Source: Stylophora pistillata (lineage: Eukaryota). From it: a DNA stretch of 64,000 nt. The DNA lies in assembly GCF_002571385.2 (NCBI RefSeq), contig NW_019218071.1, positions 62,001 to 126,000 on the forward strand, given 5' to 3'. Under the pieces are notes generated by a model, which saw only the letters and a list, made by a program, of their open reading frames with translations, was not told where the DNA came from and did no database searches. Every line of letters starts with the position of its first letter. Position 1 is the stretch's first letter. A program made the translations under genes and the position numbers. Shown here in pieces: positions 2,261 to 10,630 of this stretch.

Positions 2261-2430
2261 AAAGTGGATGTCAAAAGTGCACTTTTCAAAGTATCTGTTT
2301 GCTTGTGAAAGTGAATAGGGAAAGTGAATAGGGAAGTTGAATAGGGATTTCAGGATTACATTAAGAAGATTTCACAGAAATATGCTGTGTGAAGGGCGTC
2401 ATAATTCAATTTCTGCTTGGTCTCTTTTAG

Positions 2431-5400
2431 ATCATGGCTCACCAGATCCATGGGGGCATACTGGTCAGCTTGGTCCAGGATCCTATTCTGGTTCAGCTGG
2501 CTCCTACAGCAACAGTTATGGCATGCATCCAAGAGATAGCATGGTGGGTTGCACAGTTTAGTTACATGTACAATCACATTTTTGTTGGGTTGATTTGGTT
2601 TTGATTTAATTTGTTTACAATGTAGGGTTTTGTTTGTTTATTTTTAGAGTGATGTTCGTGGTATTCCCGTTTCAGCATTAGCAAAGGGTCCAGCTATTCA
2701 CCAGCCTAGGGTGGGCACTGTTTATGGTGTTAGAATGCACATTCATCATCTCTGACCAGCATTGTGCTGATTACTTCCTCTTACCGGCTTGAACACAAGC
2801 TTAGCTGGCTGTAATCATTGCAAAATTGGGGTAGACACATAATATGCTGGTGCCACTTAAAGGGTTTCATTGCTGTCAAATAACATTAATTTTAACATGA
2901 CCCTTCTTCCTGTGATTTATTAGCATGTGGGTCTTGCTCTTTGGTTTGTTTTCCTTTTGGCATCTCTCACCTTAAGTCAAAGTGTTGTACATGTGAGAAG
3001 TGAGCATCAAGCTGTTTTGAACAAGGAAATCATTCAATGCTGTGGGCCTGTCTGACTCTTAACTGATCACGGGCTTTTAACACTTCAAAACCTACATTGA
3101 TTTAACATACATTTACTTTTCTATGCTGATTTTTGATTGTCAACTTTACACCTTTAGTGCAAATTTTTAATTTATCATGGAGTAGAGAAAATTTGATGAG
3201 TTTGTGGTGCAAGTGTGTGGTATCTTTCTGTAACATAGCTGTATTCATCAAGCATAATTTGTTAATTTAAAGCCTGCTATTTGCATTCCAAACCATGAAA
3301 CGTCCTATCTATGAAACATGTTATTTTCTATTAACTGCTTCTTCAAAACTTCTTTGTTCATTATAGACTTTTAATTGTGTATCTTACATTCTATATGAGT
3401 ATCCAAAGTCTGAAATATTTCCATTAAATTTTCAATTATTACATTTTTTTTAAGTATTTTTGCATTTGCTGAATGAATCTAATTTTTGAGCTAATTTTTT
3501 GCAACATCAGTAAATGTAGTCGTTACCTTAAAGGTAGAGTGCTTTATCTACAGAAGCACATTTGTGGATACTTAGGATTTGTATTGCTTCAGCTAAGCTT
3601 TTCCACTACATCTTCAAATTCCACAGGGTTACCATCACTTGGGCCATGGTGAGCCAATGGAGAGACTGTCGAGTTTACCACCAATGACATCATTTAGACA
3701 ATCAGGAATGCACCATGGTCAATCATCACCCTATCTTCATTCTTCAGTGTCACCACCTCTAAATGGAAGTGATCCAATGGGTATGGTCTCTGGTTTAAAA
3801 CCAATCCCAGGGCTCAACACTAACTTTTCAACTTACTGGCCAAGTGGCTCATGAAACCTTAGATGGTACGACAATGTCAGTTTGTTTACTAGCCAAACTG
3901 GTTAGTGGAAATCAAAAACTGCCAGCCAAAATCGAATTTCTACTAGTCTCTGGCTAGTGGGCCACTGTTAGTGTCGAGCCCTGTAATCCTTCAGTTGAAA
4001 ATGTACCATAATTCAAGCAAGAGAGCTCAAGTTTTTTAGGAACAGCTGATTTCTTTTTATAGTCCTAGTTGTCATTTCCTCGGAACTTGTACTTAAAAGT
4101 ATGCTGCAAAAAGAGAATGATCTTTTTTTCCAACTACTTAAAGATGATCATTCAATTAATTTTCCCAACTAACAGAGCCATGTTTTTCCTGCTTTCAAAG
4201 GGAGGGTCCCTGCTATTGAAGGAATTTTGGGAAGGGGGCAGTGGAGGTATAATATTGTAGATTGGCTTGTGGTTGCTTTAGTAATTAAAAAATTTCCTGA
4301 CAAAAAATCTGTACAGGAGGGCCTCTGTGAAGTGAATATTTAAGTTTAAAGAAAGGCAAAAAAACTTTTTTGCTAGTGGTGCACTTCTTCGTGTGGATTC
4401 AGGGCACCATATTGTTTTCCTTTTTTCCGTTCTTGTGATATATCAAATTGTTACTTTTTTATTGCAGCCAGTCACAGCTCTAGGGCACCCACATCTGGTT
4501 CACAAACTGGAGACACACTAGGGAAGGCCCTAGCATCTGTAAGTGGACAATCCTGTTTGAGGATGTAATTTAAACAGCCTTACAATTTACTTAGGAAAGC
4601 TGAAAGAATAATTTGCTGCTTGCTAAGTTGTGATTGTCAAAAGATAGTAGAGAGTTTTAGATTCACGTTTGGTGTGTTAACCGCGAACCTTAAACCGCAG
4701 TTAGCGGTTTGAAGGTAGGAGTAATTAATCAACCGACCTCATCAACGGATCTTACATCTTCGGCCCTACGTTTTTGAAGCATGCGCTCCATTCGCTCCCT
4801 GCAACCTCCTCCCTTCCGTTTAACGAAGTTTCCATCATCACTGAAGGCTTCACTGAGTCTTTGAGCAACTTTTTTCCCACTCGGCCGGTTGTTCGGGTCT
4901 GTGGTAACTTGCTTGTCTCGCCAAATGTAAGTCTTGTTCCACAAGCGGCCAACGAAATGGAAGCATACTTGAGAAAAATCAAGAAAAACAGCGATATGTT
5001 TTTCGTGCTAGGGTTCCATTCGATTTCGAATTAACAAAAACCGGCACAGAAATGTTCACTGGTCCCAAAATCGGAAGTACCATTACACGTCTTTTTTATC
5101 AAAACAAAAGTAGTGCTCCGCCATCTTGAATTACCGACAGGATGAAAGTCCTTCATTTAAACACAAAATGTGGCCTAAAGTTTGGTTTTCTACCGTCCCA
5201 AACGCATGGGCCAAAAAGAAAATACCTCAAATGACATATATTTACGGGACATACCAAAGAACGTTCGAATAAGAAAAAGAAAAGCGCCGAGAGAGTTGAC
5301 CTACCTGAAAATGCCTTTTCCGAAGTTGAAACGTGAACCGCTAACGGCAAACGTGACAGCTTGTGTCTGGTCACGTGACTTGTAGCGGTTTGGGGTTACA

Positions 5401-8400
5401 CGTTGTAAGAAACAAACGTGAATCTAAAACTCTCTAGTGTTTAGTGTGGTCTCTAAATCTGAAACTGTTTATAAATATGTCTTAAAAGATTGATTGTTCT
5501 CAAAGATTTACCCAACAGACAATGGTGGGTCATACTCATCAAACCCAACAACACCAGTAGCATCTCCTCCTCCTCCATTGGCCACTGTGAGCGACAGACC
5601 TTTATCAGGTAAGATGTTGTTACCTAGCCTTACCATTTCTGCAGTTTGTTTAAAGAAAATGGTATATGTAGATTGTGATTCAATCGCAAAAAAGCCACTT
5701 GAGGAAGATTGTGAATAGTCACCGGGGTCTGTCATGAACCTCTGAATTTGTTTTATTCTGTCTAACTGTATACCTGTTCCACAACAGTTGCTTTAGATTT
5801 TATTGGTAGGCAGTGTTCATCCTAATTTTAATTATGACAGGTAAGGGAAATTTTCAAGCTAGTAGAGCAATCTTTTTTCCTGTAGCAACTTTAGGTGATC
5901 ATTATAGAGGTTCTACAGTCAGTTAGTTTTAGTGGTTACTGCTTGTAAAGGAGAACACTTTGGCTTTAGAAGAAAAATAGATCTACCTTGATTTAACAAT
6001 GTTGAATTGATGTTATTATAGCTGGCTCTGGAGCTTCAGGACATTCTTCAAGCTGGGGAAGAGCTAATCAACCAACGTCGCCTCCATACGAGAGTCATCT
6101 GCATTCTCTTGTGAGTTGGAGTTTGTCATAGCACTGAGTGAATGATCAATCCTTAATGAACACCCTATTCTCCATACTTTTCTCTATGGATTTCCTGAAG
6201 TGCTGACTGGGTGAATGTGTTTAACAATTCAGATTTCCTTTAGTTTAGTAATCATTTCCTTTCTTCTTGTGAGGTCAAAGTGTTATTCAGGGGTGAAAAA
6301 TGAGGTGCTAGTCACTCATAGAGATCAGAGGATAAAATATCTTGTTCATTTAAGTTAAGTGATTAAACAATGGTTCATCAGGGTAGACAAATGCTAATGT
6401 AAAAAAATGAAGAAACAAAAAGGGCACGAGAATGATAAACATGACTTTTAAGAATTTGTGTTAAGTTTAATTCATTAGCATACATTACTTAACACCTTTC
6501 CCAAAATTAGTGTGTCTCATCAAGGAGATCGCTCTTTTTTCGTTCTTACTTAGACATGTTGATTTTACATTACAGCAAAGCAGAATGGAGGAGAGGCTTG
6601 ATGATGCTATCCATGTTCTGCGCACCCACGCTGAAGGTAGCCTCCCTCCTGGAATGTCACCAGTAGTAGCTGGAAGCTTGCTGAGTGCTGCAGCAGCAGT
6701 AGCAGCAAGTGCAAGTGGGGTTCAGGGTGTAAGTTATTCAGCCTCTGTGGGAAGTAGTGGTGCTTCAGCAGTAGCCATGGATCAGATGGTAAGCCAGAAG
6801 ATTCTGAACTACACTCCCATAGCTGCAGCTTTTTTTTGATTATGAGAGTGGGCCCCTGCAATTCTAGATCATCTCAAAGCAAAAGTCTGTATACATTTAA
6901 ATGTGCATGGGATGCCCTCCCCTCAAAGATGTTATAGTGAGGCAGGGGATACATGATAACACAGCCTAGAAAGTAAATTTGTCTAAGAAAGGTACTATTA
7001 TTAGTTGAACTAGTTACACTAGGCTAGCCTTAAAAGTAAAATTGAACAGCTAGAGAAATGTTGTCACATTATTTGAAAGTATTGTGTGCGTTGAAGTGAA
7101 AGTTCTTTAACTGTTGTTAGGTTAGAAAAATAAACTCGAAAATAGTGAATTATCTGTTTTACCTGTACTGGTAATTTACAAAGAAAAACGGTAAAAGTAC
7201 GAAAAGTTAGGATATCTCAGTCATTTCCTCAATAAGTAAGCTACAAGAAACTGTTGAAAACTAAACTGCACTTGATAATCTTTGTTGATGAAACTCTGTT
7301 ATTCTTTAGAGTGGTGGACATAGTGGAATGGAAGATGATCCAGGAATGGCGTCACCAAGTACCCTATCAAGTAGAGGAGCAGGTTCACAAATGTCCCCCA
7401 GTAACTCAGAGACCAGTGAATCAAGATGTATGTACATTTCGATGTATTCTATCAGTAATCGGGATTTCTTTCTTTGGCAGTGGTTTTTTGAAAAGAAACG
7501 ATTTGATTTGTTGACAAAAATGTCGAGGTGGTTGTAAGAAATTTGACTCGCCGTAGAGGAAGACATTTTTTTTCAATTCAACCTCCCAAAAAAATTCACG
7601 TGCATAAGGCGACTGAAAAGCACATTCCAGAAATGTTACTTCAGGCTCTCACTTTACAAAGACAACGTACCATCCTTTTTTTTTAGTTCAACACAACCTT
7701 GGTTATGTTGATTAAGAGAAAAAAGCCTTCTAAGCTACTCTGATTTGACTGGTCATCATAACTATATTGATATATTCACACTGGACAGATGAAAATATTA
7801 TCATCTCCGTGCAGGTTGGATGTGTAAGGGAAAATTCTAGTTTGCTTATAATCATGGATTAAGTAGGTTGTCTTTCTGCTCTGTCAGATGGTTCTAAAAT
7901 GGACACAGGGGGTGACAGTGCAAAGAGCAACAAAGACTCGTCATCAAAGCAAGATATGAAAACTAATGGTGATTTGGCGGAGGATAGAGACAAGAGGGAT
8001 TTGATTGTGGATGATGATGATGATGATGACGATGATAAATTGACAGAAGATGGTGGTGTTGATGACAATGGCCGAGTCAGGGTTGTCAGGGAACAAGAGC
8101 GGAGATATGCAAATAATGCCAGGGAAAGGTATGATCTTGAAAAAGCGTACGCACAGGCAGGATGAAGCAGTGGTACATTAGAGTCTGATACCCGGGTATC
8201 TCTAACTACTTATTATCTAGATGGCTGAACCCATGTCTGTGAGACCAAAACTGAAACTACTAAATACCAGCATACTGTAAATTTGTGTGGTGATCTTGTA
8301 ATGGTTCTTTTAGCAACGGTTAGTTCAAGTTAAGAAAATTATTACTATTTTAGCATACCAAAAAAAAAAGGGGCAATTTGTAAGGCGGGTGTATGATAAC

Positions 8401-10630
8401 TCCAGTCTTTCAAGCGTCTTTAAATGTAGACCATTTCAGACTGAAATTTCGATATTATTCTTAATGGCTTTGGCTTGAAATTTTATGTACTGGATACTTA
8501 CACCATGCTTTTTTTATGGAATCATTAATTAGGCTGATTGTTATTGAAGTCTTCATTTTGAAGATAAGCCTTTTTACTCGGTACATCTGCAATGCCTAAC
8601 ACATTTGGTCCCCAGGAGGAGGTTGGAAGGCAACAGTTTTCCAGTGTTTTTCTTTTTATGGTCTTCTTTCTCAGAAAAGTTGAAAACTTTTACCGAGTGT
8701 GGCCTATGCCTGAGGCTTGATAAATTTTTTAGCACCAAAAATTACTGTGCGCACTTGTCTCACGCAACTGAAGACAAAGTTTTTCGCAAACCAAACAAAC
8801 ATTTTCCAAGTGCGTACGGGCTCTAAGTAACATTTTCACAATCACTGAATGATGCAAAAATAAAACGTTAAGCAGACCCTGCACTGTGTCAGACTATACG
8901 TAGAGAGAGAGTCCACTTCCATGAAGTACTTAAGTTGTTAAGCTCTCGAAATCTCCACTTCGTTTTCACCTGAGACTTTTTAATCCGGTGGCGACATTTT
9001 TTATAACCGCAAACTAGTGTCGATCGTAAAAGGCTCAAACCATTGCGACTCTCCAGAATCCCAGCAAGAGACAGGGAAAAAAAAAAAAAGATCCCAGATC
9101 GATTTGATATTCAACAGTCCAATTTTGTGCTCTGCACCTTGCCTTAACAGGTTGAGAGTTCGAGACATAAACGGAGCCTTCAAAGAATTGGGAAGAATGT
9201 GTATGATGCATTTACAGGGTGACAAATCCAACTCTAATACTAAACAGACTAAGGTGAGATTCTAAGCTTACTCCCCACAAAACTCTTTATTACAGGATGA
9301 GGGTTCGAGACATCAACGGTGCCTTCAAAGAATTGGGCAGAATGTGTCAATTGCATTTAGAGAGCGACAAACCCCAGACCAAGGTAACAAAAAAGACAAA
9401 TTTTGTCACTTCCAAAGGTTGACTCTTTCTGTCATCTCCCTTTGCAAGTTTCTGGTCAGTTTTTATTCAGTGACCATGTCACAGAGTAATTGAACGTTGC
9501 ATGTCACTCTCCAAGATGCCCTTGATCTCCAGGACTGATACTACCACTGTGTTAAGGAGGCTTCTTTGTTTGTTATATAGATCTCGTAAAGGCCTTGACT
9601 GATGGGAACGAATAACATATGCAGCGTGAATTTGCAAATGCTTTCACTAGCACCTCAGCTTGTAATCATACCCCCCCTGTTGTAAGTGTGTATCGTTATG
9701 ATCGTTAATTTTCTCACATATGGCTTTGTCCCACAGCTTGTAATCCTTCACCAAGCAGTATCAGTTATCACAAGTTTAGAATCGCAAGTACGAGGTAAGC
9801 TGCGAGTGATTTCTTGTTGTCTTCTTTGTTCTGGAACGGAGAAAGAGGATAGGTTTAGGGCTTGGTGAGGATGAGGTTTTCCTTTACCTATGAGTCAGAT
9901 AATTATGAAACCAAACTAAGCCCTTTTGATCAAAGCCCTTGAAGCAGCAATGAACTGTAATCTCCACCGGCTGGCAGTTTAACCATTTAAAACATTTTCG
10001 GCTTTTCTTAGAGCGAAATCTCAACCCCAAGGCAGCTTGTCTTAAAAGGCGCGAAGAGGAGAAAGGTGAAGAGGAAGCCCCGGAGAAAAGAGCTGTACCG
10101 GGAGTGGACAAACCCTTTGACACCTCAGGGGCAGCAGCAGGGCGTGGGAGAGGCAGACGAGGAAGAAGGTCGTCAAGAGGTGGGTGGGAGTTTAGTCAAG
10201 TCGCCAACTTGGCGGAAGTTCAGTTTCGTAGCAAACCGTTTTGTTCGTCGTCTATTGTGAATAGTTTGTGATGGAAATATCGCCTTGTCGGACGAAAGAG
10301 ATAGATTGACGGACTAACTAATCGACCGACCTATGAATTATTATCAGTTTTCTCTGTTACACAATTCCTTCCAAATCTTTCTTTCACGTTTGATGTTGTA
10401 AGTTGAAGGTTTAAAGGGATGTTCGAAATTTTCATGACCAGTTTTATTCAAATGCATTTTCCTACTCTTAGTTTAGGAGTAACATCTGATGTATCAGTTA
10501 GCAACAACTGATATCATATTTCATTGCTCTAAAAGGGGCCTATAACGGCGAAGGCCGAGGAATGCCATGTGGACCACTGAACGGCTATGAACCAAAGGAC
10601 CATGGAGATCCACCCTCCTTAAATGCGTGA
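2431..10630 (+). CDS. TCF12: Class I bHLH E-protein (TCF3/TCF4/TCF12, daughterless family); multi-exon, 5' exons lie upstream of the window
   Basis: Phase-consistent GT-AG exons: 2431-2543, 2648-2710 (tentative), 3627-3780 ([11 protein letters not shown]), 4468-4538 ([13 protein letters not shown]), 5506-5608 ([18 protein letters not shown]), 6022-6110 ([11 protein letters not shown]), 6576-6788 ([18 protein letters not shown]2-like), 7310-7427, 7888-8128 ([11 protein letters not shown]), 9151-9253 or 9296-9383, 9737-9794 ([19 protein letters not shown]), 10012-10179 ([18 protein letters not shown]), probable last exon 10536-10630. The motifs are diagnostic of E-proteins; the paralog symbol is nominal. 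Confidence 0.95.
3808..3983. mobile_element. MITE, hAT-like termini
   Basis: 17-bp TIR CAGGGCTCAACACTAAC / GTTAGTGTCGAGCCCTG (1 mismatch); no clean 8-bp TSD. Confidence 0.6.
4649..5436 (-). mobile_element. Non-autonomous PIF/Harbinger-like element retaining a Myb/SANT-like fragment
   Basis: TIR AGAGAGTTTTAGATTCACGTTTG / CAAACGTGAATCTAAAACTCTCT. 3-bp flank AGT on both sides (or TA if the ends are 1 nt inside). ORF 4944-4729 reads [35 protein letters not shown], like a trihelix/Myb-SANT fragment. Confidence 0.7.
9151..9253 (+). CDS. E-protein bHLH helix1-loop exon, copy A ([34 protein letters not shown])
   Basis: Flanked by ttaacag and gtgaga, 103 nt (3n+1), in frame with the flanking exons. 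Confidence 0.9.
9296..9383 (+). CDS. E-protein bHLH helix1-loop exon, copy B ([29 protein letters not shown])
   Basis: Flanked by ttacag and gtaaca, 88 nt (3n+1), same phases as copy A; absent from the ORF track. Confidence 0.92.

What the first reader, a model, noticed from the sequence alone, without database searches (positions are those of the whole stretch)
9151..9383. Tandem-duplicated, mutually exclusive bHLH exons in a probable cnidarian E-protein: an independent E12/E47-like switch
Seen in sequence: two paralogous exons encode the end of the basic region, helix 1 and the loop. Copy A (9151-9253) is [34 protein letters not shown]; copy B (9296-9383) is [29 protein letters not shown]. 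Both have canonical splice sites and identical phases (3n+1), so including both or skipping both shifts the frame. Only 42 nt (9254-9295) separate them, and the branch-point candidates (ttctaag, cttac) lie under 20 nt from the upstream donor, the classic steric mechanism of mutual exclusion. In the first 52 nt the copies differ at 5 sites and 4 are synonymous, which points to purifying selection on both. Divergence is concentrated in the loop, and A is 5 aa longer. Both copies have G where E-proteins normally have E (DINEAF), so the duplication probably postdates that change. Established: vertebrate TCF3 makes E12/E47 from mutually exclusive exons covering the whole bHLH. Inference: here only helix1-loop is swapped, so this is a convergent switch that could tune dimer partners (Achaete-scute, Atonal, Twist, Id) or DNA affinity.
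Basis: partly seen in the sequence, partly recalled or inferred. Interest (0 to 1): 0.88.

Follow-up and report, generated by a model that had tools for sequence, protein, structure and literature searches.

The report
Alternative bHLH exons in coral E-protein
A stony-coral gene for a master partner transcription factor (an E-protein) carries two neighbouring versions of one small exon and puts exactly one of them into each mRNA; the same pair exists in a sea anemone, so this is an old cnidarian counterpart of the vertebrate E12/E47 switch, apparently of separate origin.

Summary
Exon A (9151-9253, 103 nt) and exon B (9296-9383, 88 nt) are paralogous. Both are AG/GT-bounded and 3n+1 long, 42 nt apart, and encode helix 1 plus the loop of the only E-protein gene found in this genome, which best matches Stylophora pistillata.

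RNA contigs from two independent studies show all four expected junctions (8128>9151, 8128>9296, 9253>9737, 9383>9737). No A>B junction and no skip of both exons was reported. By rough contig depth, A:B is about 1:2.

Both isoforms are already RefSeq models in Stylophora, Pocillopora, Montipora, Acropora, Orbicella and Oculina. I found no paper describing them.

The main correction concerns age. Nematostella has the same A/B pair (34 and 29 aa, 58-nt intron), and both its copies carry E, not G. The duplication therefore predates the anemone/stony-coral split, and the shared G arose afterwards.

An octocoral, a scyphozoan and Actinia show one exon only.

Most likely mechanism:
- A 42-58 nt intron too short to splice A to B.
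- Frameshift and early stops as a backstop.

The functional effect, on the end of helix 1 and on loop length (+5 aa in A), is inferred and untested.

Similar tandem bHLH exons appear in crustacean, mollusc, annelid and flatworm gene models, so the theme recurs.

The parts
7888..8128 (+). Constitutive exon encoding an acidic stretch and the basic region (...[15 protein letters not shown], ending with AG of the last Arg codon). It is the common splice donor for A and B.
   Evidence: Translation. RNA contigs cover 7888-8129 and join 8128 to 9151 and to 9296.
9151..9253 (+). Exon A, 103 nt: last basic-region residue, helix 1 and a 13-residue loop ([34 protein letters not shown]). This is the derived copy, with 5 extra loop residues.
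   Evidence: Joints 8128>9151 and 9253>9737 in runs X1 and X2. The identical protein segment is in RefSeq isoform X1 of Stylophora pistillata (P0294).
9254..9295 (+). 42-nt spacer between A and B (gtgagattctaagcttactccccacaaaactctttattacag). It carries A's donor, B's polypyrimidine tract and acceptor, and candidate branch points (ctaag, cttac) 11-18 nt from A's donor.
   Evidence: No 9253>9296 joint was reported. The homologous spacer is 42 nt in Pocillopora, 51 in Orbicella, 51 and 53 in two further coral assemblies, and 58 in Nematostella.
9296..9383 (+). Exon B, 88 nt: the canonical-type copy ([29 protein letters not shown]) with an 8-residue loop like other E-proteins.
   Evidence: Joints 8128>9296 and 9383>9737. 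The segment is in RefSeq isoform X2 (P0163).
9737..9794 (+). Constitutive exon encoding helix 2 ([19 protein letters not shown] + G). It is the common acceptor for A and B.
   Evidence: Joints from 9253 and from 9383, and on to 10012.
10012..10179 (+). Constitutive exon ([18 protein letters not shown]...). It contains the premature stop that is reached if A and B are both included.
10536..10630 (+). Last coding exon (...[31 protein letters not shown], then stop).
   Evidence: The loose end after 10180 matches 10537 onward. tblastn of P0163.
2427..7427 (+). Upstream coding exons of the same gene. Boundaries are approximate, from tblastn: 2427-2543, 2648-2710, ~3621-3821, 4467-4541, 5497-5607, 6060-6116, 6576-6788, 7310-7427. 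The first ~190 residues lie before the window.
   Evidence: tblastn of the Stylophora, Pocillopora, Orbicella and Acropora proteins against the window. The loose end before 7888 matches 7398-7427.

Best explanation
This is the single E-protein (class I bHLH) gene of a stony coral. The genome best matches Stylophora pistillata.

What it is. The exon encoding helix 1 and the loop was duplicated in tandem before sea anemones and stony corals diverged. Every mRNA carries either A or B. B is the canonical form with an 8-residue loop. A differs in three ways: the residue at the basic-region/helix-1 junction (L instead of M), the last two helix-1 residues before HL (MM instead of QL), and a loop 5 residues longer and rich in Ser, Asn and Thr.

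How exclusion most likely works (inferred):
1. The 42-nt spacer (42-58 nt in all species examined) leaves B's branch point under about 20-35 nt from A's donor. That is too close for a spliceosome to remove the spacer.
2. Both exons are 3n+1 long. Including both gives a stop upstream of the last exon junction, and skipping both gives a stop after 4 nt. Such mRNAs should be unproductive and open to nonsense-mediated decay.

What it does (inferred). The two isoforms are E-proteins with different dimer-interface and loop geometry. They therefore probably differ in partner preference, dimer stability or DNA-backbone contacts.

Shown versus inferred. Shown: the exon structure, use of both exons in RNA, no A-B or skip junction among the contigs laid, and conservation across Scleractinia and in Nematostella. 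Inferred: the steric block, decay of aberrant forms, and any functional difference.
For: - Exon anatomy and phases.
- RNA: joints 8128>9151 (contig depth 87 in X1, 342 in X2), 8128>9296 (141, 695), 9253>9737 (87, 369) and 9383>9737 (152, 717), all GT..AG, in two runs from two studies. No A>B joint and no skip joint. A plus B depth roughly equals the depth of the flanking exons.
- Frame consequences.
- Single locus in the genome.
- E-protein identity.
- Both isoforms are modelled in Stylophora, Pocillopora, Montipora, Acropora, Orbicella and Oculina.
- The same tandem arrangement stands in independent assemblies with spacers of 42, 51, 51, 53 and 58 nt.
- Nematostella A (34 aa...GDKTSTNSKQTK) and B (29 aa, MRVRDINEAF...KPQTK) lie in the same order.
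- The A exons, Nematostella's included, form one group with support 85/91.
- Across corals the changes are few and mostly synonymous: A has 1 synonymous and 1 Thr/Ser change, B has 3 synonymous changes (Stylophora versus Orbicella).
- Steric hindrance and mRNA surveillance are established ways to keep exons mutually exclusive: PMC3585155.
Against: - The RNA evidence comes from assembled contigs, which drop rare variants and give only rough depths. A low level of A+B or skipped mRNA cannot be excluded.
- The runs carry no library record, although the GT..AG joints and the more than 10-fold exon/intron depth ratio show they hold spliced RNA. Two poly-A runs labelled coral metagenome were blank.
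- The minimal spliceable intron length in corals or Nematostella was not measured here. A 58-nt intron might be spliceable, so in Nematostella the frame rule may matter more than the steric block.
- No tissue or stage data and no protein-level or binding data are available.
- Actinia shows only the B-type exon, which requires a secondary loss. A single N at L007:32889 may also hide sequence.
- With helix-1 columns alone the tree does not resolve A orthology. That orthology rests on the loop segment, the exon lengths and the exon order.
Confidence: 0.85

Rival explanations
1. One of the two copies is a non-functional duplicate. It would be a pseudo-exon spliced in as noise, or used mainly to make unproductive transcripts, so there is no real protein switch.
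For: Only contig-level RNA evidence is available. No protein or functional data exist. Actinia appears to manage with B alone.
Against: - A makes up roughly a third of the junction depth in two independent studies, and it is joined in frame on both sides.
- The A peptide is nearly invariant across the coral genera sampled (one Thr/Ser site, one Gln/Leu change in Oculina, one Lys/Arg change in unnamed coral sequences). It is also kept, with the same length and loop motif, in Nematostella.
- Nucleotide changes between corals are few and mostly synonymous.
- Neither copy has a stop or a damaged splice site in any of the six genomes.
Confidence: 0.05
2. The tandem copy is an assembly artefact, either a collapsed or expanded repeat or two haplotypes stitched together.
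For: The two copies are very close together and 86-90% identical over their first 52-66 nt (52 nt: 5 differences; first 66 nt: my hand count on the alignment).
Against: - The same A-spacer-B arrangement is present in five other independent assemblies.
- A contig at intron-level depth, which may be unspliced RNA or contaminating DNA, runs from the upstream intron into exon A. Another runs from exon B into the downstream intron.
- The two copies differ systematically in loop length.
Confidence: 0.01
3. The pair descends from a mutually exclusive bHLH exon pair already present in the cnidarian-bilaterian ancestor. It would then be orthologous to vertebrate E12/E47 or to the tandem copies seen in protostomes, and not an independent invention.
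For: - Tandem bHLH exon copies appear in gene models of crustaceans (Homarus, Hyalella, Darwinula, Cyprideis, Amphibalanus), molluscs (Magallana, Pinctada), an annelid (Lamellibrachia) and flatworms (Macrostomum).
- The upstream exon boundary (ANNARER | xRVRDIN) appears shared with protostomes, judged from where the second copies start in those read-through models.
- The segments are too short for a decisive tree.
Against: - In bilaterians the repeated unit is helix 1, loop and helix 2 up to QQVR. In vertebrate TCF3 it also includes the basic region. In hexacorals it is helix 1 and loop only, ending at an intron seen in every cnidarian locus examined.
- The 34-aa A-type loop occurs only in stony corals and Nematostella among about 40 E-protein segments compared.
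- The octocoral and scyphozoan genomic loci hold a single exon with no room or remnant for a second.
- Single-type proteins are seen in a hydrozoan, hemichordates, echinoderms and chelicerates.
- Each bilaterian group's copies carry their own signature: QPLTK in spiralians, [18 protein letters not shown] in pancrustaceans.
Confidence: 0.07
4. Mutual exclusion is enforced mainly by competing RNA base-pairing, as in Dscam (a docking site pairing with a selector in either exon), or by trans-acting repressors as in TCF3, and not by the short spacer.
For: - Helix-1 codons of both exons are unusually conserved at synonymous sites in the species that have the pair: Stylophora-Orbicella 3/30 against 18/47 in flanking exons (p=0.008), and Stylophora-Nematostella 8/28 against 26/47 (p=0.03). 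Comparisons with single-exon Actinia show no such difference. This hints at RNA-level constraint.
- An intronic element at 8937-8958 is 74-77% complementary to the start of both exons.
Against: - That complementarity is no better than the other chance pairs in the region (27 pairs found). It is not the best duplex even in the window, and no equivalent conserved partner appears in Pocillopora, Orbicella, a further coral assembly or Nematostella.
- The A-spacer-B region does not fold better than shuffled sequence (z = +0.96).
- The uniformly short spacer (42-58 nt) across the coral-anemone divergence (over 500 My by my recollection) is itself the conserved feature.
Confidence: 0.1

Closest known systems
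Vertebrate TCF3 (E2A) exons 18a/18b, which give E12 and E47
   Same: The same protein family (class I bHLH E-protein). Tandem-duplicated exons in the bHLH domain are used in a mutually exclusive way to give two isoforms. These differ at the end of helix 1 and in the loop (E12 MCQLHLNSEKPQTK versus E47 MCQMHLKTDKAQTK).
   Different: - TCF3's alternative exons cover the acidic stretch, the basic region and the whole HLH up to QQVR. Here only helix 1 and the loop are swapped, and helix 2 is shared.
- TCF3's exons are more than 1 kb apart, and exclusion depends on a conserved intronic silencer bound by PTBP1 plus hnRNP H1 sites in 18b (PMC6795145). Here the spacer is 42 nt.
- In TCF3 the two loops are the same length. 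Here they differ by 5 residues.
- The lineage and the inferred origin differ.
Alpha-tropomyosin exons 2/3 and other mutually exclusive pairs kept apart by steric hindrance, with nonsense-mediated decay as a backstop (as in FGFR2 IIIb/IIIc)
   Same: Two adjacent alternative exons whose intervening intron puts the downstream branch point too near the upstream donor. Frame-incompatible double inclusion or skipping is removed by surveillance. Both mechanisms are listed in PMC3585155.
   Different: - The mechanism is inferred here from distances and frames only. No splicing assay was done.
- The whole intron is only 42 nt, shorter than the roughly 41-nt donor-to-branch distance I recall for tropomyosin (from memory, not checked).
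RefSeq isoform models of cnidarian 'transcription factor 4-like / 12-like'
   Same: These are the very isoforms. Examples are Stylophora pistillata X1 (A, XP_022797668.1) and X2 (B, XP_022797669.1), with equivalents in Pocillopora, Montipora, Acropora, Orbicella, Oculina and Nematostella.
   Different: They are automatic annotations without comment. I found no paper noting the paralogous exon pair, its exclusivity, its age or the parallel with E12/E47.
Tandem bHLH exon copies in protostome E-protein (daughterless-type) genes
   Same: Gene models of crustaceans, molluscs, an annelid and flatworms contain two or three consecutive E-protein helix 1-loop-helix 2 segments. This looks like read-through across tandem alternative exons.
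   Different: - Whether these are used alternatively was not shown here. The crustacean RefSeq isoforms I could list all carry the second, daughterless-type copy.
- The repeated unit includes helix 2.
- The copies carry lineage-specific signatures.

Membership tests
E-protein (class I bHLH: E2A/TCF3, TCF4, TCF12, daughterless) | bHLH domain with the E-protein signature (ERRxANNARER basic region, [16 protein letters not shown] helix 1, KLxILHQAV helix 2, followed by [17 protein letters not shown]) | tested here: met
   Exon translations. Pfam HLH with E about 1e-10 on both isoform proteins of the best-matching species. PDB hits to E2A and TCF4 bHLH chains with E 1e-25 to 1e-15.
E-protein (class I bHLH: E2A/TCF3, TCF4, TCF12, daughterless) | N-terminal activation domain AD1 (LDFS motif) and overall collinearity with E2A | tested here: met
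   The Stylophora protein P0294 aligns over residues 2-652 with full-length E2A (8ubk, E 7e-48), including DKELSDLLDFS. That part of the gene lies upstream of the window. The window matches residues 191-715 of P0163, the B-type isoform of the same gene.
E-protein (class I bHLH: E2A/TCF3, TCF4, TCF12, daughterless) | Dimerises with class II bHLH proteins and Id, and binds E-boxes | not testable with these tools
Mutually exclusive exon pair arising from tandem exon duplication | Two adjacent, homologous exons of similar length and identical phase | tested here: met
   103 and 88 nt, both 3n+1. Protein identity 72%. The first 52 nt differ at 5 sites.
Mutually exclusive exon pair arising from tandem exon duplication | Each exon is spliced to the same upstream and downstream exons in mRNA | tested here: met
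   All four joints with GT..AG ends in two runs from two studies.
Mutually exclusive exon pair arising from tandem exon duplication | Transcripts with both exons or with neither are absent or rare | tested here: inconclusive
   No 9253>9296 or 8128>9737 joint was reported, and A plus B depth roughly equals flanking depth. However, contigs drop rare variants, so only abundant aberrant forms are excluded.
Steric-hindrance type of mutual exclusion | The distance from the upstream exon's donor to the downstream exon's branch point is below what a spliceosome needs | tested here: inconclusive
   The spacer is 42 nt here and 42-58 nt in five other genomes, so any branch point lies under about 25-40 nt from the donor. 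Neither the branch point nor the minimal intron size of these species was determined.
Orthologue of the vertebrate E12/E47 exon pair | The same duplicated unit (basic region plus the whole HLH) and presence in intermediate lineages | tested here: not met
   The unit here is helix 1 and loop only. Single exons are found in the octocoral and scyphozoan loci. The hydrozoan, hemichordate and echinoderm proteins show one type.

The most novel reading that the evidence does not exclude
E-protein genes have evolved mutually exclusive bHLH exons independently at least four times: in hexacorals, vertebrate TCF3, pancrustaceans and spiralians. If so, splice-switching of helix 1 and the loop in the common dimer partner would be a general animal way to re-wire bHLH networks. 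In hexacorals the loop would be the tuned element: 8 or 13 residues through B or A, plus a 28-33 residue cassette in anemones. The choice of exon would depend on nucleotide-level signals inside the helix-1 codons, which would explain their unusual synonymous conservation.
Probability: 0.3. Interest if true: 0.8.

Novelty: new variant of a known kind. Interest (0 to 1): 0.62.

Why it matters
E-proteins are the obligatory partners of the tissue-specific bHLH factors (Achaete-scute, Atonal, Twist, MyoD-type) and the targets of Id. Changing the E-protein's dimer interface therefore changes the whole network at once.

Vertebrate E12/E47 has been the textbook case and has looked like a vertebrate speciality. 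An old and conserved pair in corals and Nematostella, of apparently independent origin and with a different and simpler exclusion mechanism, gives two things:
- A second natural experiment on why this domain is splice-switched.
- A tractable test system. Nematostella allows CRISPR and transgenics, so exon-specific deletions are feasible.

It also matters for practice. Coral and anemone expression studies that treat this gene as one transcript will miss isoform changes. Ab initio gene models that read through both exons are wrong, and several such models are in the public databases.

Tried and rejected
- **Competing RNA structure (docking site and selector).** An intronic element at 8937-8958 is complementary to the start of both exons. 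It is no stronger than chance pairs, it is not the best duplex, and it has no conserved counterpart in four other genomes. The region folds no better than shuffles. Rejected as unsupported.
- **Recent gene conversion as the cause of the A/B similarity in helix 1.** Within-species A-B synonymous differences (4-7 of 15 codons) are no lower than between-species A-A or B-B differences (4-5 of 14). An A-specific ATA and a B-specific ATC codon are kept in both corals and Nematostella. No sign of homogenisation. A very short conversion tract at the G codon cannot be excluded.
- **Poly-A RNA runs X21 and X22 (labelled coral metagenome).** Nothing was laid. This is uninformative.
- **Genomic loci for Acropora and Montipora (the Complexa clade).** Three look-ups found no record. 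For that clade I have only protein isoforms, which do show both A and B.
- **Search for A-type exons in further anemones or other hexacoral orders.** The protein search with the Nematostella A region returned only the coral and Nematostella clusters. The absence of other taxa may reflect database content.
- **Whether crustacean first-copy exons are used.** The listed RefSeq isoforms all carry the second copy. Not resolved.
- **Joined (spliced) coding sequence.** Exons were searched by reference, and full-length comparisons used database proteins. The joined forms were built only inside a script to locate stop codons.
- **Complex or structure prediction.** None was run. It would not have distinguished the isoforms' functions.
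Full report
**1. What is in the sequence**

On the + strand the window holds most of an E-protein gene. tblastn of coral proteins places coding exons from about 2427 to 10630.

Around the finding the exons are:

| Exon | Coordinates | Encodes |
|---|---|---|
| Upstream | 7888-8128 | ...[15 protein letters not shown] + AG |
| A | 9151-9253 (103 nt) | helix 1 + long loop |
| B | 9296-9383 (88 nt) | helix 1 + canonical loop |
| Downstream | 9737-9794 | [19 protein letters not shown] + G |
| Next | 10012-10179 | [18 protein letters not shown]... |
| Last | 10536-10630 | C-terminus and stop |

- A reads [34 protein letters not shown] and B reads [29 protein letters not shown].
- Both follow ...acag and precede gt. 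Both are 3n+1 long. The spacer is 42 nt.
- In the first 52 nt there are 5 differences, 4 of them synonymous.
The one slip is that the downstream exon ends at 9794, not 9796.
- In the whole 398-Mb assembly the A peptide finds only these two places (E 7e-17 and 3e-9; the next hit has E 2.5). The gene and the pair are therefore single-copy.

**2. Is it used?

The sequencing-run search returned runs of the same organism. They have no library record but hold 60-80% of the words of a mostly intronic stretch.

I laid two of them, from different studies (2014 and 2025), together with two poly-A runs labelled coral metagenome. The poly-A runs were blank. The two unlabelled runs hold spliced RNA:
- Exon depth is 10-20 times intron depth.
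- Every joint has GT..AG ends.

| Joint | Contig depth, X1 | Contig depth, X2 |
|---|---|---|
| 8128>9151 | 87 | 342 |
| 8128>9296 | 141 | 695 |
| 9253>9737 | 87 | 369 |
| 9383>9737 | 152 | 717 |
| 9794>10012 | 327 | 971 |

- No joint 9253>9296 and no joint 8128>9737 was reported.
- The A and B branches appear as separate short contigs, each flanked by 26-29 nt of the common exons. That is the pattern expected for a bubble in a transcript graph.
- A plus B depth (228 in X1, about 1040 in X2) is close to that of the flanking exons. A is about one third of the total in both runs.

Caveats given by the tool apply. Contig depths are rough, and contigs drop rare variants. Abundant double-inclusion or double-skip forms are excluded, but rare ones are not.

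**3. Frame logic**

- Including both exons shifts the frame and gives a stop 280 nt after the end of the upstream exon. That lies inside exon 10012-10179, upstream of the last exon junction.
- Skipping both gives a stop after 4 nt (AG|C TTG TAA).
- A-only and B-only are open through to the natural stop.

**4. Identity of the gene and organism**

- The window matches the RefSeq protein 'transcription factor 4-like isoform X2 [Stylophora pistillata]' (P0163) at 100% in several exons, better than Pocillopora, Orbicella or Acropora.
- Both Stylophora isoforms hit Pfam HLH.
- The A isoform aligns end to end with human E2A (8ubk, E 7e-48), including the N-terminal LDFS activation motif. It also aligns with E47, E2A and TCF4 bHLH crystal chains. 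In those alignments the extra five loop residues of A appear as an insertion relative to E12/E47.

**5. Distribution: not a Stylophora oddity and not young**

A profile of the two exons searched against 1.8 billion representatives found coral fragments that read through A, the spacer and B. It also found a full-length Orbicella A-type protein.

Named hits and cluster members show both A-type and B-type RefSeq isoforms in:
- Stylophora pistillata, Pocillopora verrucosa and P. damicornis
- Orbicella faveolata and Oculina patagonica
- Montipora capricornis and M. foliosa
- Acropora millepora and A. muricata

By my knowledge of coral taxonomy, these genera span both major stony-coral clades.

The A peptide is almost invariant. 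It shows S or T at one site, Q or L at one site in Oculina, and K or R at one site in two unnamed coral sequences. B is identical in all named species.

*Nematostella.* Its isoforms carry either [34 protein letters not shown] (34 aa) or [29 protein letters not shown] (29 aa). In the genome these are two adjacent exons of 103 and 88 nt, in the same order, separated by 58 nt (L004: 19565-19667 and 19726-19813).

The features shared with corals are:
- Exon lengths and order.
- The A-specific loop pattern GDK-[ST]-x-[ST]-N-[ST]-KQTK.
- The B-specific initial Met and CQLHL.
- A spacer beginning gtgaga.
- A synonymous marker: ATA in A and ATC in B, in both lineages.

A nucleotide tree groups all A exons, Nematostella's included, with support 85/91. 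With helix-1 columns alone the grouping is unresolved, so the orthology rests on the loop segment and on the structural characters.

I conclude that the duplication predates the split of sea anemones and stony corals. That split is over 500 My old by published molecular clocks, which I cite from memory.

*Where the pair is missing.*
- The octocoral Dendronephthya has a single B-like exon in introns too small to hide a second.
- The scyphozoan Rhopilema also has one exon.
- Clytia proteins show one type.
- Actinia tenebrosa has only a B-type exon. This means a secondary loss, or sequence hidden at a single N at L007:32889. I did not try to fill it.

**6.

Both Nematostella copies have E in DINEAF, and both coral copies have G (GGA in A, GGT in B). 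The E>G change therefore came after the duplication and reached both copies. It did so either by parallel substitution or by a very short conversion tract.

G at this position also occurs in unrelated E-protein copies (Darwinula first copy, Macrostomum second copy, P0063, P0220). It is therefore a recurrent and tolerated change.

**7. The spacer is the conserved feature**

| Genome | A-B spacer |
|---|---|
| Window | 42 nt |
| Pocillopora verrucosa | 42 nt |
| Orbicella faveolata | 51 nt |
| Unnamed coral assembly (L011) | 51 nt |
| Unnamed coral assembly (L010) | 53 nt |
| Nematostella vectensis | 58 nt |

In all corals the spacer ends ...ataactctttattacag or a near variant.

The other introns around these exons measure 353-1022 nt in the window. 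Those I measured in the other genomes are 398-913 nt; for L011 I did not measure the flanks.

Candidate branch points for B's acceptor in the window (ctaag, cttac) lie 11-18 nt from A's donor. Close proximity of the two exons is an established cause of mutual exclusion, and mRNA surveillance is another (PMC3585155).

I take the steric block plus frame incompatibility as the most likely mechanism. Neither the branch point nor the minimal intron size of these animals was measured.

This differs from vertebrate TCF3. There the exons are more than 1 kb apart, and exclusion needs an intronic silencer bound by PTBP1 together with hnRNP H1 sites in exon 18b (PMC6795145).

**8. A hint of RNA-level constraint**

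I compared codons that encode the same amino acid, counting how many differ at the nucleotide level.

| Comparison | Helix 1 (A and B pooled) | Three flanking conserved exons | Fisher p |
|---|---|---|---|
| Stylophora-Orbicella | 3 of 30 | 18 of 47 | 0.008 |
| Stylophora-Nematostella | 8 of 28 | 26 of 47 | 0.03 |
| Orbicella-Nematostella | 10 of 28 | 26 of 47 | 0.15 |
| Stylophora-Actinia (B-type exon only) | 9 of 14 | 30 of 47 | 1.0 |
| Nematostella-Actinia (B-type exon only) | 9 of 15 | 27 of 47 | 1.0 |

The comparisons with single-exon Actinia show no difference between helix 1 and the flanks.

In the tree, all A and B exons of pair-bearing species group apart from the single exons, even from the anemone Actinia (80/92 with all columns, 91/95 with helix-1 columns). 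This fits splicing signals embedded in the helix-1 codons of both exons that are relaxed once the pair is lost.

The numbers are small and the tests were chosen after seeing the data, so I report it as a lead. A specific docking/selector pairing was looked for and not found.

**9. What the switch probably changes**

A and B differ at three places:
- The residue joining the basic region to helix 1: L or M in corals, V or M in Nematostella. E12 has L and E47 has V at this position.
- The two residues before HL at the end of helix 1 (MM versus QL). This is the same place where E12 (QL) and E47 (QM) differ.
- The loop: 13 residues versus 8, with Ser, Asn and Thr added in A.

Helix 2 is shared. From what I recall of solved E47 structures, which I did not inspect here, the end of helix 1 packs in the four-helix bundle. 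The end of the loop and the start of helix 2 (QTK) touch the DNA backbone.

The inferred effect is on partner choice, dimer stability or backbone contacts, and perhaps on phosphorylation of the A loop. Nothing here tests that.

The loop is clearly a hot spot for splice variation in cnidarians:
- Anemones add an in-frame cassette after A or B that again ends in PQTK. It is 28 aa in Nematostella (L004:20556-20639) and 33 aa in Actinia.
- Rhopilema has a +9 aa form.
- Oculina has a +4 aa form. Both of these look like alternative-donor products, judged from the protein models only.

**10. Relation to other animals**

The representative search also returned many gene models with two or three consecutive E-protein bHLH segments:
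- Vertebrate TCF3 read-throughs (E12 plus E47).
- Crustaceans: Homarus, Hyalella, Darwinula, Cyprideis, Amphibalanus.
- Molluscs: Magallana with three copies, and Pinctada.
- The annelid Lamellibrachia.
- The flatworm Macrostomum.

In these the repeated unit runs from xRVRDIN to QQVR, so it includes helix 2. The copies carry lineage-specific signatures. Spiralians pair a ...QPLTK copy with a canonical copy. Pancrustaceans pair a divergent first copy with a daughterless-type second copy.

All of about 40 segments outside hexacorals have 29 residues, or 30 in one case. The 34-residue A type is confined to stony corals and Nematostella.

Together with the single exons in an octocoral and a scyphozoan, this favours an independent hexacoral duplication. 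The segments are too short for a decisive phylogeny.

Whether the protostome copies are alternatively spliced was not settled. The crustacean RefSeq isoforms I could list all carry the second copy.

**11. Novelty**

Six usable full-text searches found the TCF3 literature and general work on mutually exclusive exons. None described E-protein exon pairs in cnidarians. A daughterless case in a butterfly concerns newly found, previously unannotated exons; I did not check whether they lie in the bHLH region.

The isoforms do exist as unannotated RefSeq models. The fair description is therefore: real, expressed, ancient, visible in databases, apparently undescribed, and a new variant of a known kind.

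The scan's earlier notes for this place only repeat the same first-reader finding.

**12. Verdict**

Three corrections apply:
- The dating relative to the E>G change is wrong.
- The pair is a hexacoral feature, not a coral-only one.
- The wider recurrence of tandem bHLH exons makes it one instance of a repeated theme.

Interest is moderate to high for bHLH evolution and for the evolution of splicing.

Noticed in passing
L004:20556-20639 (Nematostella); Actinia proteins P0189 and P0272: Sea anemones have an in-frame cassette exon after exon A or B. It lengthens the bHLH loop by 28 aa (Nematostella) or 33 aa (Actinia) and again ends in PQTK followed by gtaa, like the 3' end of exon B. It combines with either A or B in RefSeq isoforms. 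No equivalent joint was seen in the coral window.
   Followed up: partly
Proteins P0005, P0008, P0013, P0190, P0195 (crustaceans); P0187, P0238 (molluscs); P0192 (annelid); P0011 (flatworm): Gene models with two or three consecutive E-protein helix 1-loop-helix 2 segments suggest tandem, possibly mutually exclusive, bHLH exons in pancrustacean and spiralian daughterless/TCF12-type genes. Spiralian copies share a QPLTK loop signature across phyla. Use in mRNA was not shown. P0225 (Echinococcus) and P0420 (tardigrade Hypsibius) may be further cases but were not confirmed.
   Followed up: partly
L007:31596-31733 (Actinia) and L006:53384-53431 (Rhopilema): A second short exon ending in ...ANNARER lies downstream of the normal basic-region exon (Actinia TIKHRRFANNARER, Rhopilema SANNARER). 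It appears in some RefSeq isoforms. This may be an alternative or duplicated basic-region exon.
   Followed up: no
window 9151-9202 and 9296-9347, compared with L004, L008 and L007: Helix-1 codons of both exons are much more conserved at synonymous sites than the flanking conserved exons in species that keep the pair, but not in Actinia, which has one exon. This may reflect exonic splicing signals. Numbers are small.
   Followed up: partly
Proteins P0324 (Oculina X2) and P0200/P0285 (Rhopilema): Further loop variants: +4 aa (VTTK) after exon B in Oculina and +9 aa (VSSVHPQTK) in Rhopilema. They look like products of alternative 5' splice sites, judged from the protein models only.
   Followed up: no
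window 9002, 9077-9079, 9640: Differences between the RNA-run contigs and the assembly lie only in introns. T>G at 9002 is seen in both runs, a 3-nt deletion in the A-run near 9077 in one run, and G>A at 9640 in one run. No difference lies inside exon A or B.
   Followed up: no
window 7999-8041: A GAT/GAC repeat encodes a run of about nine Asp just upstream of the basic region. The reads tool skipped it as a repeat. Its length differs between coral species' proteins.
   Followed up: no
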